Part shown: positions 28,194 through 63,027 of the stretch, piece after piece | Layout of the letters: each line of letters starts with the position of its first letter | How positions within the stretch are numbered: position 1 is the stretch's first letter | Source of the DNA: Perna viridis | Taxonomy: Eukaryota | Direction: 5' to 3' | NCBI GenBank assembly: GCA_037379345.1 | Contig: CM074522.1 | Location: forward strand, 37,825,288 to 37,889,287 | DNA: 64,000 nt | Notes under the pieces: model-generated | Told to the model about the DNA's origin: nothing | Seen by the model: the letters and a program-made list of their open reading frames with translations, nothing else | Database searches by the model: none | Position numbers and translations under genes: made by a program

Positions 28194-30242
28194 TCACATC
28201 TTGATCAGCTCAGCAGAGTGACCGTCCCAACAATGAGTTCTTCCGTCACATTTCTGAATCAAATACTTGTGGTTGGTGACGTCATAGGAAATTTCTAACA
28301 TATGGTCATGTGAGTTATCGGTTGTTGTCATCACGGAAACGGTGTTTCCATTGGCTAAGTCCTGCATGTCATCGTGATCAATGTAGAGTTCATGGTAGTG
28401 GTGACCTGGTGGGTCTTGGTTGGTTACGGACGTACGGAAGTGAGCGTCTGCCTGTGCATTACCTCCGCCGGACAAGGCACTCGGCTTTTCAGTGAGGTAG
28501 TCTCCCATGGTTTCTAAGTGGTTCAACATTTCCTTAATTGCCTCTACTTCTTTTCCAACTTGTGAGCCTTCTCTTGTAACAGGCATTACTGGATATCTTA
28601 ATCGAAGTTTTCCTACGCCTGGAATATCTGGTAGCGTGATACGCTGACCAGAAGATACTACTCTACGGAGGACGCCTTTAGTGTCGAGAACTCCAACTGC
28701 GCCACGGTCAGTATCGGCCTTGTCTTTGTCAACGTTGGTACCATGATAGAATTCTACAGGGGTTCTGTAAAACAAATTGTAAGCAGTTCCATTGTATGCT
28801 TTGTCGTCGGTGAGACCTCCGTTTCTGCCGTTTTTAATGATCTGTAACCTTCCACGTTTGTCTCTCCTGTCAAAAAGTTTAAGATTGTAAGGATTCCACG
28901 AGAACAAAGGTGTAAGATAGATGAGTTCAAGTGGAATGGCATAGGTATACCTTACACTTTCAGTTTTACAGAAATGATGGTGTGTGTGCTCATCTCTACC
29001 GCAGTAGTGAATGTTCATTGGGGCAACTTTAGGGTTAGACGTCTGAGCGACAAACAAGTTTCTATCGGCGAATCCACGTTTAACAGTTTTTATTCCCATA
29101 GCACCCTTCTTATCATGTCTGAAAAATCTATGGTAGTTGGCTGTGTTTAGAAGTGTATCATTGTGTGTATCATAGGGATCAAGAGTAAGCATACCAAAAG
29201 TGTTATCATGAAGTACAGCACCGTAGTTATCTTTGCCGGGAATCTCGTTCATAATTTTGTCAATGAGTCCTTGGCGATATGCACCGTCCTTAAAATCACC
29301 ATATCCCTCAGTCCACAGGAACTTGTTTCTTCGTTGGCTTAAAGATGATGCAAACTCGAATCTGCCGCTTCTTGTGTGAGAAAATCTCGTTATATTCATT
29401 CTATGTCCTACCCTTGGTGCGATATCATCGACGGGTTTTACAGAAGCCAATGGTAGGTCGAAAGACAACGGGTGGCATGAGATCCTGTAGTTCCACTGCG
29501 CAAACTCAGGTGTACCATTAACGATGTTCATAATCGTTGTTGGCAGATATGAAAAATTCTCTAAATAGTGTTTACCGCCAGTGTACGATGTGAACCGGAT
29601 CTTCTCCTGGAGATCGAACCAGCTGGTAGCGTCTATGTGATGACGATCACTTTCAAAAGGCTCGTCTACTGTTTTCGTGTTTGCAGTCCAAGCGCCCTCT
29701 AGATAGCACAAAACCGGTTTAAAGTACGGTCTGTAGTCTCTGAAATGGGGATTCTGGAAAGCGAATGCTCTGAAATAGTTCTGCATTTCATGAATTTGCT
29801 CCTGGAGTGTTGGCTTAGCCAGTACTGACGGCGGAACCTTTGGAAATGGAATTTCTTCTTGGGCGTTGTATCCCTTTGACGTTTTACTCGGCATGCGTAG
29901 TTTATAGTCATTATGTCTTGTTCTGAATTCAACTCCATTGAGCGATGCAATGAATTCTCCCATACCAACTGTTCTGTCATAGTTTGAATGTTCGTGAATC
30001 GAACAGATCGACCTATACGAATGAGCCGATGTGAAATAGGGTCGGGTTCCATCGCCTGTGACGCGCACCTGTTTAATTCCAGAATCCTGATCGGCTCGTG
30101 CTCTTTCACCTACAGCAAGTTCAGTCAACATGAGTTGGCGAGTGATATCTTCAACACTCTGTTTGAGCTTGGCAAAATCATGATCAGTGACAACAGCAGA
30201 TGCCACTGTAAATACGGCAACGAAAATCACTGGTAGTCGCAT
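28194..30242 (-). CDS. Uncharacterised secreted His/Cys-motif protein, paralog C (682 aa), single coding exon
   Basis: The true start is MRLPVIFVAVFTVASA (signal peptide) immediately after the acceptor cttctttttcag|G ATG. The ORF-track extension to 30371 is intronic. Colinear with the + strand copies. AATAAA on - at 28135-28130. Confidence 0.9.
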   Translation of the reverse strand: MRLPVIFVAVFTVASAVVTDHDFAKLKQSVEDITRQLMLTELAVGERARADQDSGIKQVRVTGDGTRPYFTSAHSYRSICSIHEHSNYDRTVGMGEFIASLNGVEFRTRHNDYKLRMPSKTSKGYNAQEEIPFPKVPPSVLAKPTLQEQIHEMQNYFRAFAFQNPHFRDYRPYFKPVLCYLEGAWTANTKTVDEPFESDRHHIDATSWFDLQEKIRFTSYTGGKHYLENFSYLPTTIMNIVNGTPEFAQWNYRISCHPLSFDLPLASVKPVDDIAPRVGHRMNITRFSHTRSGRFEFASSLSQRRNKFLWTEGYGDFKDGAYRQGLIDKIMNEIPGKDNYGAVLHDNTFGMLTLDPYDTHNDTLLNTANYHRFFRHDKKGAMGIKTVKRGFADRNLFVAQTSNPKVAPMNIHYCGRDEHTHHHFCKTESVRYTYAIPLELIYLTPLFSWNPYNLKLFDRRDKRGRLQIIKNGRNGGLTDDKAYNGTAYNLFYRTPVEFYHGTNVDKDKADTDRGAVGVLDTKGVLRRVVSSGQRITLPDIPGVGKLRLRYPVMPVTREGSQVGKEVEAIKEMLNHLETMGDYLTEKPSALSGGGNAQADAHFRTSVTNQDPPGHHYHELYIDHDDMQDLANGNTVSVMTTTDNSHDHMLEISYDVTNHKYLIQKCDGRTHCWDGHSAELIKM

Positions 30243-30440
30243 CCTGAAAAAGAAGATAATTATACATAGATTATCCTTCTGTTTCGAGCAGGTTGAAATA
30301 TTTCTACGCACGAGATAGTTAAAATCAAGAGCTTCAGCGAGAATGTTAAAAACCTTAATATCAACTACCAAGAGTGTAGAAAAGAAAGAAAATCATATAA
30401 GCTGAAGCAAAGAAAAAAGATATCCTTCCAGTGTGTTGCC

Positions 30441-60984: not shown

Positions 60985-63027
60985 ATGAAAACCTTTTTGG
61001 TTTTATCTTGGTTGGTTACTGTCACCATGGCAGTGGTTGACGAACATCGAGTCAGCTTATTAGAGCGCAAGCTTGAAGAACTGTCTAGACAACTTATGTT
61101 GACCGAGTTATCGATATCTGAGAGAGCTCGTTCACAACTGGACTCTGGTATCAAACAAGTTAGAATAACGGGAGATGGAACCAAACCTTATTTCACATCA
61201 ACACACACACTTAATTCAGTATGTTCAATCCACGAACATGCTAATTATGACAGAGCTCCGGGAATGGGCGAATTTGTTGCTAATCTCAACGGCGTAGAGT
61301 TCAGAACTCGTCACAACGATTACAAACTTGTAATGCCAAGTAAAACATCACAAGCCTACCACAAAACGGAGGATATTCCATTCCCACGTGTTCCTCCGTC
61401 TGTCCTAGCCAAACGTACTCTTAACGACCAAATCAAAGAAATGCAGAACTACTTTAGAGCATTTACTTTCCAAAACTACCATTTCAGAGACTACCGCCCA
61501 TACTTCAAGCCAGTTCTCTGTTATCTAGAAGGTACATGGACAACAAATACAAAGAACATAAACGAACCTTTCGAGAGCGACCGCCATCACATCGATGCTC
61601 AGAATTGGTTTGACCTACAAGAAAAGATCAGATTTACTGCCTATACTGGGGGTAAGCACTACCTGGAAAATTTCTCCTATCTACCAACAACTATCATGAA
61701 TATGAACAATGGAACACCCGAGTATGCGCAGTTTAATTATAGAATACTGTGTCATCCACTCAAAAATGATCTTCCTCTTGGACTTCTGAAACCAGTCGAT
61801 GACATGGCTGCTAGAGTTGCTCGCAAATGGAACATTACCCGCTTTGCTCACTCCCGTGCTGCGAGATTCTCCCTTGCAGCCGACCACCGATTGAGAGGAA
61901 ATCAGTTCCATTGGCAAGATGGATACGGTGCTTTTAGCGAAAGGAGATATGTTAATGGTTTATTGGACGATCTTATGAATGAGATCCCAGGCAAGAACAA
62001 CTATCCAGCTAAGCTTCACGATACAACATTTGATATGAAGACAGTTGACTCTCGCCATCCACAGAACGCGACCCTGCTGAACACCGGATATTACCACAGA
62101 TACTACAACCATGATAGAAAAGGTGCCATGGGAACGTTCAGAAATCATAGAGGATACTCAGACTCAAACTTATTCGTAGCTCAAACTACTAATCCCGAAG
62201 TGGCCGAAATGAAAATAAAATGGTGCAGAAAAGATAATCATCAAAAACAAATCTGTAGTCAGGAAGGGGTGCGATATTCCTATGCCATTCCATTGGAAAT
62301 AATTTACATGACACCACTCATGTCATGGAACCCTCACAATCTACCTACAATCACCGACCACAGGAAATTCTATCTGGTTACGAAGGGAGGCAGAAATGGT
62401 GGAATGACAAAAGACAAGGCATACAATGGAACTGCCCTGAACAATTACTACCACACTCCTGTCGAATTTTTCCACGGTACCAATGACGACAAGGATAAGG
62501 CCGACACCAACAGAGGTGCAGTTGGTGTTCTAGACAGTCATGGCAACATCAAGCGTGTCGTAGCATCCGGTGTACGCATCACATTGCCTGACATCCCAGG
62601 AGTCGGCAAAGTCAGAATGAGATACCCAATCATGCCAGTAGCAGCCGAGGGAGACCCCACAAGGAAGGAATTAGAAGCTGTTAAAGAGGTTCTTAACCAT
62701 CTTGAAACAATGGGATCATATCTCCAGGAGAAACCAAGTTCCCTTTCAGGGGGTGGGAATGCTAAAGCTGATGCTCACTTCAGAACCTCCGTTACCAACC
62801 AAGATCCACCAGGTCATCACTATCACGAACTGTTTATCCCCAACGAGGACATGCTCGCACTAGGCAAAGGAGAGACAGTCGCCGTCGTTACCACTACCGA
62901 CAACAGCCACGATCACACACTCGAGGTTTCATATAATACACAAACCCACAAATACACAATACACAAATGTGACGGATTGGCTCATTGTTGGGACGGTCAT
63001 ACTCAGGATCTTCTCCGACTGGAATGA
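60985..63027 (+). CDS. Uncharacterised secreted His/Cys-motif protein, gene B (680 aa)
   Basis: Uninterrupted ORF after the ttacag acceptor. Same N-terminus as 48172. The C-terminal ~40% carries many synonymous and some amino-acid changes relative to gene A, and the 3' flank differs. Confidence 0.93.
   Translation: MKTFLVLSWLVTVTMAVVDEHRVSLLERKLEELSRQLMLTELSISERARSQLDSGIKQVRITGDGTKPYFTSTHTLNSVCSIHEHANYDRAPGMGEFVANLNGVEFRTRHNDYKLVMPSKTSQAYHKTEDIPFPRVPPSVLAKRTLNDQIKEMQNYFRAFTFQNYHFRDYRPYFKPVLCYLEGTWTTNTKNINEPFESDRHHIDAQNWFDLQEKIRFTAYTGGKHYLENFSYLPTTIMNMNNGTPEYAQFNYRILCHPLKNDLPLGLLKPVDDMAARVARKWNITRFAHSRAARFSLAADHRLRGNQFHWQDGYGAFSERRYVNGLLDDLMNEIPGKNNYPAKLHDTTFDMKTVDSRHPQNATLLNTGYYHRYYNHDRKGAMGTFRNHRGYSDSNLFVAQTTNPEVAEMKIKWCRKDNHQKQICSQEGVRYSYAIPLEIIYMTPLMSWNPHNLPTITDHRKFYLVTKGGRNGGMTKDKAYNGTALNNYYHTPVEFFHGTNDDKDKADTNRGAVGVLDSHGNIKRVVASGVRITLPDIPGVGKVRMRYPIMPVAAEGDPTRKELEAVKEVLNHLETMGSYLQEKPSSLSGGGNAKADAHFRTSVTNQDPPGHHYHELFIPNEDMLALGKGETVAVVTTTDNSHDHTLEVSYNTQTHKYTIHKCDGLAHCWDGHTQDLLRLE

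What the first reader, a model, noticed from the sequence alone, without database searches (positions are those of the whole stretch)
28194..63027. Expanding cluster of an unassigned ~680-aa secreted protein family with intronless CDS and His/Cys metal-ligand-like motifs
Seen: four intact genes and two pseudogenes. Each protein has a signal peptide, an N-terminal heptad coiled coil (LLERKLEELSRQLMLTEL), a large aromatic/His-rich body, a second amphipathic helix (KELEAVKEVLNHLETM), a Gly linker (LSGGGNA) and an ~80-aa C-terminal module. Invariant between the distant paralog C and A/B (roughly two-thirds identical by eye): CSIHEH, EFRTRHNDY, RDYRPYFKPVLCYLEG, ESDRHHID, DPPGHHYHEL, HDH, CDG-x2-HCWDGH, all 7 Cys, and five N-glycosylation sequons at equivalent positions. 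I recognise no named domain. Inference: an oligomeric, extracellular metal-binding protein or metalloenzyme under dosage selection, for example in mucus, shell, byssus, egg coat or haemolymph. This is the best candidate for an undescribed system in the window.
Basis: partly seen in the sequence, partly recalled or inferred. Interest (0 to 1): 0.85.

Follow-up and report, generated by a model that had tools for sequence, protein, structure and literature searches.

The report
Phage tail-fibre head genes in mussel
A mussel gene cluster encodes highly expressed secreted proteins whose main body descends from the head domain of bacteriophage tail fibres, so an old, unnamed family of marine animals and protists may have turned a phage's bacterium-recognition device to its own use.

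Summary
There are four intact genes with uninterrupted coding sequences of 680-682 aa and two broken copies, in a ~12.85-kb tandem array. They share seven Cys, five sequons and all the quoted motifs.

The family has no Pfam, NCBIfam or PDB sequence match, but it is not an orphan. Residues ~42-570 are homologous to the C-terminal domain of myovirus tail fibres:
- Bacillus phage G gp431: BLASTP 5e-33, hhalign 2.4e-37, Foldseek 1e-28.
- A protein in the gene-H slot of a P2-like Pseudomonas prophage: hhalign 3.6e-60.
- Pseudoalteromonas prophage fibres.

Four His (83, 85, 110, 201) and about 44 other residues are conserved from phages to mussels.

The eukaryotic members come from molluscs, brachiopods, annelids, cnidarians, Cafeteria and a foraminifer. 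They form one clade (SH-aLRT 100) with animals monophyletic (99). The Nematostella and Lingula orthologs have coding introns, so the acquisition is ancient and intron loss in the mussel is secondary.

The mussel copies are under strong purifying selection (dN/dS 0.05-0.10). They are transcribed, very highly in one of four runs.

I read the protein as a secreted, coiled-coil, probably trimeric, metal-holding protein that recognises microbial surfaces. That function is inferred; an enzymatic role is not excluded. Earlier notes of this scan on the same window (chimeric middle gene, possible foreign origin) agree.

The parts
28194..30242 (-). Gene C: intact uninterrupted CDS, 682 aa, 67% identical to A1. 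It is closest to a Mytilus edulis protein (P0005).
35285..37327 (+). Gene A1: intact uninterrupted CDS, 680 aa. Signal peptide aa 1-17, coiled coil aa 20-51, tail-fibre-head-like core aa ~42-575, Gly linker aa 587-593, HxH..HxH module aa 593-680.
35408..37024 (+). Core domain of A1 (aa 42-580), homologous to the C-terminal domain of myovirus tail fibres. The AlphaFold2 model has pLDDT 92.8 and pTM 0.93.
37061..37324 (+). C-terminal ~88-aa module of A1 (GHHYH ... HDH ... CDGxxHCWDGH). A similar HxH..HxH module is inserted inside the core of Pseudoalteromonas tail fibres.
38249..39241 (+). Pseudogene 1: covers aa 5-347 only, broken by frameshifts and stops. About 96.6% nucleotide identity to A1.
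48172..50214 (+). Gene A2: intact, 680 aa. An in-frame upstream ATG at 48139 is an alternative start. It is a chimera: nt 5-210 are A3-type (38 diagnostic sites) and 83 of the 86 diagnostic sites from nt 271 onwards are A1-type. The long RNA contigs carry this form.
51134..52126 (+). Pseudogene 2: the same truncated, frame-broken copy in the second repeat unit.
60985..63027 (+). Gene A3: intact, 680 aa, 96% identical to A1 (dS 0.245, dN/dS 0.08).
35265..63032 (+). Tandem array of a ~12.85-kb unit (gene plus pseudogene plus spacer): two full units and the start of a third.

Best explanation
The cluster holds working copies of an old eukaryotic gene family. The ~530-aa body of the protein descends from the distal head domain of myovirus tail fibres. 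In phages this part hangs from the baseplate through an N-terminal collar domain and meets the host cell surface.

In eukaryotes the collar is replaced by a signal peptide and a parallel coiled coil in animals, or by a membrane anchor and a long stalk in protists. Disulfides and N-glycan sites were added, and an HxH..HxH module sits at the C-terminus.

I propose that the mussel protein is secreted as a coiled-coil oligomer, probably a trimer as in phage fibres. I propose that it holds one or more metal ions in the invariant His cluster (H83, H85, H110, H201) and in the C-terminal HxH pairs. I propose that it binds a conserved structure on microbial surfaces, serving defence or capture of bacteria in a filter feeder.

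Tandem duplication with unequal crossing-over raises dosage.

Shown: the homology, the phage contexts, one eukaryotic clade, purifying selection and transcription. Inferred: trimer, metal, ligand and biological role.
For: Homology:
- Foldseek of the full model against viral structures: phage G gp431, E 1e-28, TM 0.58 over 600 columns.
- tblastn 6e-27, BLASTP 5e-33, hhalign 99.9% with E 2.4e-37.
- hhalign to P0400: E 3.6e-60, 32% identity over 487 columns.

Phage context:
- P0400 carries the PF12571 tail-fibre N-terminus. It lies after the V, W, J and I baseplate genes and before sheath and tube in a P2-like prophage.
- P0390 lies after Baseplate_J in an HP1/P2-like prophage of Pseudoalteromonas tunicata.
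- P0371 lies a few genes downstream of PAAR and gp25 genes on the same contig.
- The N-terminal half of gp431 hits 'tail protein' PHROGs.

Fold: the confident core model (pLDDT 92.8) has only 14 PDB representatives at Z >= 2. Twelve of them are phage receptor-binding, tail-fibre or baseplate 'shoulder' proteins or their TssK/IglD relatives. The best is the lactococcal phage 1358 RBP, Z 5.8, rmsd 4.5 A, 150 residues aligned.

Conservation: 48 positions are conserved in both eukaryotes and phages, including four His.

Tree: eukaryotes against phage and bacterial sequences 100; animals 99; molluscs 98.

Introns: present in the Nematostella and Lingula orthologs.

Self-association: the coiled coil passes with ipSAE 0.37 against a best control of 0.02. 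The interface lies on heptad positions 18-47, the runs agree in at least 40% of contacts, and the partner pLDDT is only 38.

Selection and expression: dN/dS 0.05-0.10. RNA-type contigs cover only the CDS, with depth in the thousands in one run and nothing in sister runs of the same studies.

Metal: HxH motifs of phage tail fibres are predicted iron binders (PMC11705849, abstract).
Against: - No binding, metal or oligomer measurement exists for any member, phage or eukaryote.
- The domain is far more conserved than receptor-binding tips usually are: 45-50% identity from cnidarian to mollusc, with invariant His, Glu, Asp and Arg. That pattern also fits an enzyme.
- The structural matches to phage RBP shoulders are individually weak (Z below 6) and cover only 110-150 of 539 residues.
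- The three-copy model is confident only for the coiled coil, its fold confidence is low, and it cannot tell a trimer from a dimer.
- I could not see model coordinates, so clustering of the His residues in 3D is untested.
- The run kinds are guessed ('RNA?'), and the tissue is unknown because run names are coded.
- Two protist members are fused to a cupredoxin domain, which hints at redox chemistry.
Confidence: 0.55

Rival explanations
1. The conserved body is a metal-dependent enzyme. In phages it would be a tail-borne depolymerase or modifying enzyme acting on a bacterial surface polymer. In eukaryotes it would be a secreted enzyme that degrades or oxidises a microbial or dietary polymer. 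The invariant His, Glu and Asp set would be the active site.
For: - 48 positions are conserved from phages to animals. They include H83, H85, H110, H201, E96, D112, E182, E228, D393, E438 and several Arg.
- Identity across phyla is unusually high.
- Selection on the mussel copies is strongly purifying.
- Two protist members carry cupredoxin fusions.
- One source names the Elysia member 'Amine oxidase'. This is an automatic name with no Pfam support.
- Many phage tail fibres and spikes do carry depolymerases (established knowledge).
Against: - There is no similarity to any enzyme family in Pfam, NCBIfam or the PDB, by sequence or by fold.
- The only coherent fold matches are non-enzymatic phage receptor-binding scaffolds.
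- The cupredoxin sits far from the domain in a multi-domain membrane protein and is absent from animals.
Confidence: 0.28
2. One reading: a lineage-specific, previously unseen extracellular metal-binding or metal-storage protein of mucus, shell, byssus, egg coat or haemolymph, with His and Cys as ligands and no relation to known proteins.
For: - It has secreted-type architecture and is His-rich.
- It has a conserved HxH..HxH C-terminal module.
- Transcript depth is very high in one sample.
- No curated domain matches.
Against: - The family is neither lineage-specific nor unrelated. It occurs in four animal phyla and several protists, and it descends from phage tail fibres.
- The Cys positions are eukaryote-only pairs, typical of disulfides.
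- Most His of the mussel protein are not conserved. Only four in the core and four in the module are.
Confidence: 0.1
3. The genes are a recent foreign insertion (phage, bacterial or viral DNA, or assembly contamination), or a retroposed dead end without function.
For: The coding sequences are uninterrupted in an intron-rich genome, and GC is higher than in the surroundings (0.40-0.43 against ~0.33).
Against: - The mussel genes group with Mytilus and other bivalves inside a mollusc clade and an animal clade.
- Orthologs in Nematostella and Lingula have spliceosomal introns.
- The paralogs A and C are saturated at synonymous sites, and the A copies show dN/dS 0.05-0.10.
- The genes are transcribed.
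- The window lies inside a large chromosome-scale contig of a 723-Mb assembly.
- Pattern scans found no close prokaryotic or viral copy.
Confidence: 0.02

Closest known systems
Distal (C-terminal) domain of myovirus tail fibres. Examples: the gene-H-slot protein of a P2-like Pseudomonas prophage (P0400), HP1/P2-like prophage fibres of Pseudoalteromonas (P0390, P0372, P0387) and Bacillus phage G gp431.
   Same: The ~500-aa domain is homologous end to end: 25-32% identity, hhalign E 2.4e-37 to 3.6e-60. Shared motifs are HxH, R-H-N-D-Y, S-x-R-H, E-N, F-x-D-x-N-L-F-V-A, Y-A-x-P-L-E-x-I, W-N-P-Y and R-x-R-Y/F-P-I. A helix precedes the domain. A similar HxH..HxH small module occurs in the Pseudoalteromonas proteins.
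   Different: The eukaryotic proteins lack the PF12571 collar domain and any phage neighbours. They start with a signal peptide or a membrane anchor. They have eukaryote-only Cys pairs, N-glycan sites and an inserted Cys-bounded loop. They carry the HxH module at the C-terminus rather than inside the core. The phage domain itself has no Pfam model and no described function.
'Shoulder' domain of siphophage receptor-binding proteins and its relatives: lactococcal phages 1358 and p2, Bordetella phage Mtd, TssK and IglD of type VI secretion, and the Haloferax virus HFTV1 fibre.
   Same: These are the only coherent structural neighbours of the confident core model. Twelve of the 14 chains at Z >= 2 belong here. 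They share an N-terminal helix packed on a beta-sandwich, and these proteins are trimers.
   Different: The similarity is weak (Z 2.6-5.8) and covers 88-171 of 539 residues. The rest of the domain has no known fold match, and there is no sequence similarity.
HxH metal sites of phage fibres: the T4 gp37 tip, R-type pyocin fibres, and the predicted iron sites of Alteromonas phage R22Y (PMC11705849).
   Same: HxH pairs occur in a phage-fibre-derived protein. One is invariant in the core and two lie on neighbouring strands of the C-terminal module.
   Different: There is no sequence match to any solved fibre. The HxH pairs here lie in a globular domain that models confidently as a monomer, not in an intertwined needle. 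Metal binding is untested.

Membership tests
Phage tail-fibre distal head domain (unnamed; P0400 / gp431 C-terminal type) | Significant sequence similarity over the whole domain | tested here: met
   BLASTP 5e-33. hhalign E 2.4e-37 to gp431 aa 498-999. hhalign E 3.6e-60 to P0400 aa 187-686. The HMM built from the eukaryotic alignment hits all 27 phage or bacterial sequences.
Phage tail-fibre distal head domain (unnamed; P0400 / gp431 C-terminal type) | Shared invariant residues and motifs | tested here: met
   48 positions are conserved in at least 90% of eukaryotic and at least 85% of phage or bacterial sequences. H83, H85, H110 and H201 are present in 27 of 27 phage or bacterial sequences and in 38-39 of 39 eukaryotic ones.
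Phage tail-fibre distal head domain (unnamed; P0400 / gp431 C-terminal type) | Same predicted fold | tested here: met
   Foldseek of the mussel model against the BFVD model of gp431: E 1e-28, probability 1.00, TM 0.58, 600 columns.
Functional phage tail fibre | N-terminal baseplate-attachment (tail-collar, PF12571) domain | tested here: not met
   Pfam finds nothing in the mussel proteins. The N-terminus is a signal peptide followed by a coiled coil.
Functional phage tail fibre | Location among baseplate, sheath and chaperone genes of a phage or tailocin | tested here: not met
   The window is mussel chromosomal DNA with a tandem array of the gene itself. The animal orthologs have introns and animal neighbours.
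Functional phage tail fibre | Homotrimer | tested here: inconclusive
   Three copies of aa 18-135: ipSAE 0.37 against a best control of 0.02. The interface is a parallel heptad register at residues 18-47. The partner pLDDT is 38 and the runs agree in at least 40% of contacts. The full trimer exceeds the tool's size limit.
Siphophage RBP / TssK shoulder fold | Structural superposition well above background | tested here: inconclusive
   The best Z is 5.8 (4l92_A, rmsd 4.5 A, 150 residues aligned). Twelve of the 14 chains at Z >= 2 belong to this group, but every Z is under 8.
T4 gp37-type HxH iron-binding fibre tip | Sequence relation to solved HxH fibre tips, and metal on the three-fold axis | tested here: not met
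   There is no PDB sequence match with the single protein or with the profile at E up to 10. Axis geometry could not be examined.
Copper amine oxidase (lead from a source's name for the Elysia member) | Match to the Cu_amine_oxid domain or fold | tested here: not met
   P0151 and the mussel proteins have no Pfam hit at E up to 1. No amine oxidase appears among the fold matches.
Cupredoxin | PF00127 domain | tested here: not met
   It is present only as a distant extra domain in two protist fusion proteins, P0155 and P0345. It is absent from the mussel proteins.

The most novel reading that the evidence does not exclude
Eukaryotes captured the receptor-recognition head of a phage tail fibre long ago and kept it for hundreds of millions of years as a secreted or surface-anchored trimeric device that recognises bacteria. 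On this reading it is a phage-derived pattern-recognition or prey-capture receptor shared by bacterivorous protists, cnidarians and lophotrochozoans, and amplified in mussels.
Probability: 0.4. Interest if true: 0.85.

Novelty: new variant of a known kind. Interest (0 to 1): 0.72.

Why it matters
Every named eukaryotic member I saw among the ~180 listed hits is labelled 'uncharacterized' or 'hypothetical', apart from two automatic names ('mucin-17', 'Amine oxidase'). None has a domain model. The family comprises 1131 clusters at 50% identity.

Linking it to phage tail fibres gives the whole family a testable function, which is recognition of microbial surfaces. It would also be a rare case of a phage structural or recognition protein domesticated by eukaryotes and kept across phyla.

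For mussels and corals it offers a new candidate for host-microbe recognition. For phage biology it flags a widespread, unnamed and highly conserved fibre head domain with an invariant four-His cluster. Both the structure and the ligand of that domain are unknown.

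Tried and rejected
- Pfam, NCBIfam and PHROGs scans of the mussel proteins found nothing meaningful.
- PDB sequence searches with the single protein, the profile and P0400 found nothing.
- The ESM Atlas gave no usable hit.
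- Foldseek against the PDB gave nothing at E <= 0.001 with either model.
- Pattern-based scans of bacterial and archaeal genomes and of IMG/VR found no relative. The patterns (EFRTRHND and a second eukaryote-type peptide) were too eukaryote-specific. This blank is not evidence of absence, and later searches did find phage and bacterial relatives.
- Eight literature searches found no paper on this family, on gp431, or on tail-fibre-derived genes in animals. Two attempts to read passages timed out.
- Copper amine oxidase was a lead from an automatic name. It was rejected: there is no domain or fold match.
- An alpha-carbonic-anhydrase-like HxH-25-H spacing came from my own recollection. It was rejected because there is no Pfam or fold match.
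- The 843-aa neighbour of the Cafeteria-like member is not related.
- The complex prediction gave no information on whether the H83/H85 pair lies at an oligomer interface. Only the coiled coil was confident, and pLDDT elsewhere was about 38.
- Whether the last intron is shared between cnidarian and brachiopod is unresolved. Both introns are phase 0 but lie two codons apart.
- Names for ten divergent clusters added only molluscs.

Full report
**1. What is in the window**

The region holds four intact, uninterrupted coding sequences of 680-682 aa:
- C at 28194-30242 (-).
- A1 at 35285-37327 (+).
- A2 at 48172-50214 (+).
- A3 at 60985-63027 (+).

It also holds two truncated, frame-broken copies covering aa 5-347, at 38249-39241 and 51134-52126.

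The three A genes and the two pseudogenes belong to a tandem unit of about 12.85 kb whose copies are 97.7-98.6% identical.

A and C are 67% identical. Seven Cys and five N-glycan sequons fall in the same columns, and all quoted motifs are present in all four genes.

The 725-aa TTG ORF of gene C is an upstream read-through. Translation most likely starts at the Met that begins the hydrophobic leader.

The genome has two more intact paralogs on another chromosome, at 42-43% identity.

**2. The genes are alive**

The A copies differ by dS 0.08-0.25 with dN/dS 0.05-0.10. A and C are saturated at synonymous sites.

A2 is a chimera. Its first 210 nt carry 38 A3-type sites, and 83 of the 86 diagnostic sites from nt 271 onwards are A1-type. 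The crossover therefore lies between window positions 48382 and 48441.

Twenty public runs from eight studies hold the sequence. I laid contigs from four of them, each from a different study:
- The contigs cover only the coding region (35313-37379). Nothing lies on the 3' flank (37522-38300), and the 5' flank is empty from 32794 to 34172 and from 34961 to 35157. Between those two empty stretches lies a low-level patch at 34173-34960 (item 9).
- One run reaches word depths in the thousands, and its contig ends in a sequencing adapter.
- Other runs of the same studies hold none of the words.

This pattern fits abundant, sample-specific mRNA and does not fit genomic DNA. The runs are only guessed to be RNA, and the tissues are hidden behind codes.

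The long contigs (2080, 1546 and 1213 nt, from three runs) carry the A2 form.

**3. No curated family, but a very large uncharacterised one**

Pfam, NCBIfam, PDB sequences, the ESM Atlas and Foldseek against the PDB all gave nothing.

Homology searches did find relatives: 649 proteins in one search, and 1131 clusters at 50% identity in the other. Nearly all named ones are 'uncharacterized'. Named members come from:
- bivalves and gastropods;
- the brachiopod Lingula;
- the annelids Owenia and Paralvinella;
- anthozoan and hydrozoan cnidarians.

Identity to the mussel protein is 45-56% over the full length.

A second search seeded with a metagenomic member added Cafeteria roenbergensis, the foraminifer Ammonia and other protist transcripts. 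That member lies on a contig with eukaryotic genes.

In the two protist members read in full (P0186, P0155) the domain hangs from a membrane anchor or a long coiled-coil stalk. Two protist clusters also carry a distant cupredoxin domain.

No deuterostome, arthropod or nematode appeared among the named hits listed. This is not a full survey.

**4. The link to phages**

Foldseek of the first full-length model (pLDDT 77.6) against predicted viral structures gave one outstanding match. It was Bacillus phage G gp431: E 1e-28, TM 0.58, 600 columns, 22% identity.

Sequence methods confirm it: tblastn 6e-27, BLASTP 5e-33 and hhalign 99.9% with E 2.4e-37. The match covers mussel aa ~42-570 and gp431 aa 498-999.

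The N-terminal half of gp431 matches PHROG 'tail protein' families and an ILEI-like domain.

A search seeded with the gp431 domain found 47 proteins. They include Pseudoalteromonas and Pseudomonas proteins annotated as phage tail proteins, several of them with the PF12571 tail-fibre N-terminal domain.

The contexts are unambiguous:
- P0400 sits between the P2 baseplate genes V, W, J and I and the sheath and tube genes. That is the gene-H slot, where the tail fibre is encoded.
- P0390 follows Baseplate_J in an HP1/P2-like prophage that has an integrase.
- P0371 lies a few genes downstream of PAAR and gp25 genes on the same contig.
- P0407 and P0375 lie on phage-like contigs.

The eukaryotic profile aligns to P0400 with E 3.6e-60, 32% identity over 487 columns.

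**5. What is conserved**

I aligned 39 eukaryotic and 27 phage or bacterial core domains. Forty-eight positions are conserved in both groups. They include:
- H83 and H85 (an HxH pair);
- R109-H110-N111-D112-Y113;
- S198-x-R200-H201;
- E96, E182, E228-N229, R253, Y370, R389, D393 and E438;
- W448-N-P450;
- R544 and R546.

The other His of the mussel protein are not conserved.

Cys179/Cys256 and Cys414/Cys424 are conserved in eukaryotes only. In phages they are Ser/Ala/Thr, or they fall in a eukaryote-only insert. Cys662/Cys668 form a third short loop that some protists lack. I read these as disulfides of a secreted protein, not as metal ligands. This is inference.

The C-terminal module is absent from gp431 and P0400. 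A similar module is inserted in the middle of the core in Pseudoalteromonas fibres, with the form HxH, about 25 residues, T-S/T-x-D-x-x-H-x-H. The domain E-values are 5e-6 to 1e-3, and the motif register is clear.

**6. Fold**

A deeper alignment of 73 sequences that includes phage relatives gave a confident core model, with pLDDT 92.8 and pTM 0.93.

Foldseek against the PDB still finds nothing. An exhaustive alignment to 48,161 PDB representatives gives only 14 chains at Z >= 2. Twelve of them are:
- phage receptor-binding proteins (lactococcal phages 1358 and p2, Bordetella Mtd);
- tail fibres (Haloferax virus, cyanophage A-1(L));
- SPP1 gp22;
- a contractile-injection baseplate protein;
- TssK and IglD.

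The best is 4l92_A at Z 5.8, rmsd 4.5 A, 150 residues aligned. Each score is weak on its own, but the list is coherent. It points to an N-terminal helix plus 'shoulder' sandwich scaffold, which is trimeric in those proteins, carrying about 380 residues of unmatched structure.

**7. History**

I built a maximum-likelihood tree of 66 core domains (515 columns, LG+C20, quick search, SH-aLRT support only). I left out three partial sequences: P0031, P0396 and P0397.
- All eukaryotes separate from all phage, bacterial and unassigned metagenomic sequences (support 100).
- Animals form one group (99).
- Within animals, molluscs (98) and anthozoans (95) hold together.
- Mussel genes A and C each pair with a different Mytilus protein, so that duplication predates the split from Mytilus.

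The root is not inferred. The phage side contains several deep groups from hosts as distant as Bacillus and Pseudomonas. It also shares its scaffold with other phage fibres. This makes phage-to-eukaryote the likelier direction.

The Nematostella ortholog has six coding exons and the Lingula ortholog about nine. Their last introns are both phase 0 and lie two codons apart.

The family is therefore long resident in animal genomes. The uninterrupted mussel coding sequences reflect later intron loss, not recent transfer.

**8. How it probably works**

Shown:
- secreted-type leader;
- helix 20-51;
- homology to the fibre head;
- expression and constraint.

The three-copy model supports self-association of the helix. 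ipSAE is 0.37 against a best control of 0.02. The mark was reached by 21 of 30 solved homo-pairs and 0 of 23 single chains in the tool's calibration. The calibration is weaker for eukaryotes and held no ligand. The runs agree in at least 40% of contacts, and the partner pLDDT is 38. The interface is a parallel, in-register heptad pattern at residues 18-47.

Inferred:
- The protein leaves the cell as a coiled-coil oligomer, most likely a trimer like its phage relatives.
- The invariant His cluster and the HxH pairs of the C-terminal module hold metal ions. HxH motifs do this in phage fibres (PMC11705849 abstract; T4 gp37 and R-pyocin fibres from established knowledge).
- The head binds a conserved microbial surface structure.

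The taxa that keep the family are filter feeders, suspension feeders, grazers, predators and bacterivores that live in constant contact with marine bacteria. Mussels amplify the gene in tandem. Both facts fit defence or prey capture.

The main rival is that the conserved polar constellation is an active site and the protein is a metal-dependent enzyme. The depth of conservation and the cupredoxin fusions favour this. The complete lack of similarity to any enzyme fold argues against it.

I put about 0.55 on recognition or binding and 0.28 on an enzyme.

**9. Limits**

- The full trimer exceeds the complex tool's size limit.
- Run kinds and tissues are hidden.
- The taxonomic survey rests on listed hits only.
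- The low-level RNA contigs at 34173-34960, upstream of A1, were not resolved.

Noticed in passing
window 16389-17892: A 31-bp tandem array of about 49 copies at 80% match raises GC to 0.42 here. It also produces a spurious 112-aa repetitive ORF on the minus strand (17343-17681).
   Followed up: no
window 6743-7189: A tandem array with a 49-50-bp unit (99-bp higher order) and about 9 copies overlaps the end of a 155-aa ORF (6342-6809). That ORF looks like part of an acidic, Ser/Asp-rich exon.
   Followed up: no
window 20649-21448 and 25705-26508: An inverted repeat pair of ~800 bp at 84% identity lies about 4.3 kb apart. The first arm overlaps a 171-bp tandem array (21149-21618). It may be a transposon-like element.
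   Followed up: no
window 34173-34960: Low-depth RNA-type contigs with many loose ends lie just upstream of A1, while 34961-35157 is empty.
   Followed up: partly
L010 (Pseudoalteromonas denitrificans contig) 133-13045: Three large tail-fibre-type genes stand in a row: two with a weak PF12571 hit (797 and 987 aa), then the 1014-aa protein with the domain studied here. The third is preceded by a separate 178-aa PF12571 gene, so collar and head are split into two genes.
   Followed up: no
L003 (P0155) and P0345: These protist proteins are type I membrane proteins. They combine the fibre-head domain with Pro/Thr-rich linkers, a cupredoxin domain, a Cys-rich region, a transmembrane helix and a cytoplasmic tail.
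   Followed up: partly
L009 19770-21336 (Pseudoalteromonas tunicata prophage): Two TIR-domain genes, one of ThsB type, sit between the tail module and the integrase of the prophage that carries the fibre. This is a likely defence cargo.
   Followed up: no
G000 C10:39405923-39416140 (L007, L008): Two further intact, uninterrupted paralogs lie about 8 kb apart on another chromosome. They are nearly identical to each other and 42-43% identical to A1.
   Followed up: partly
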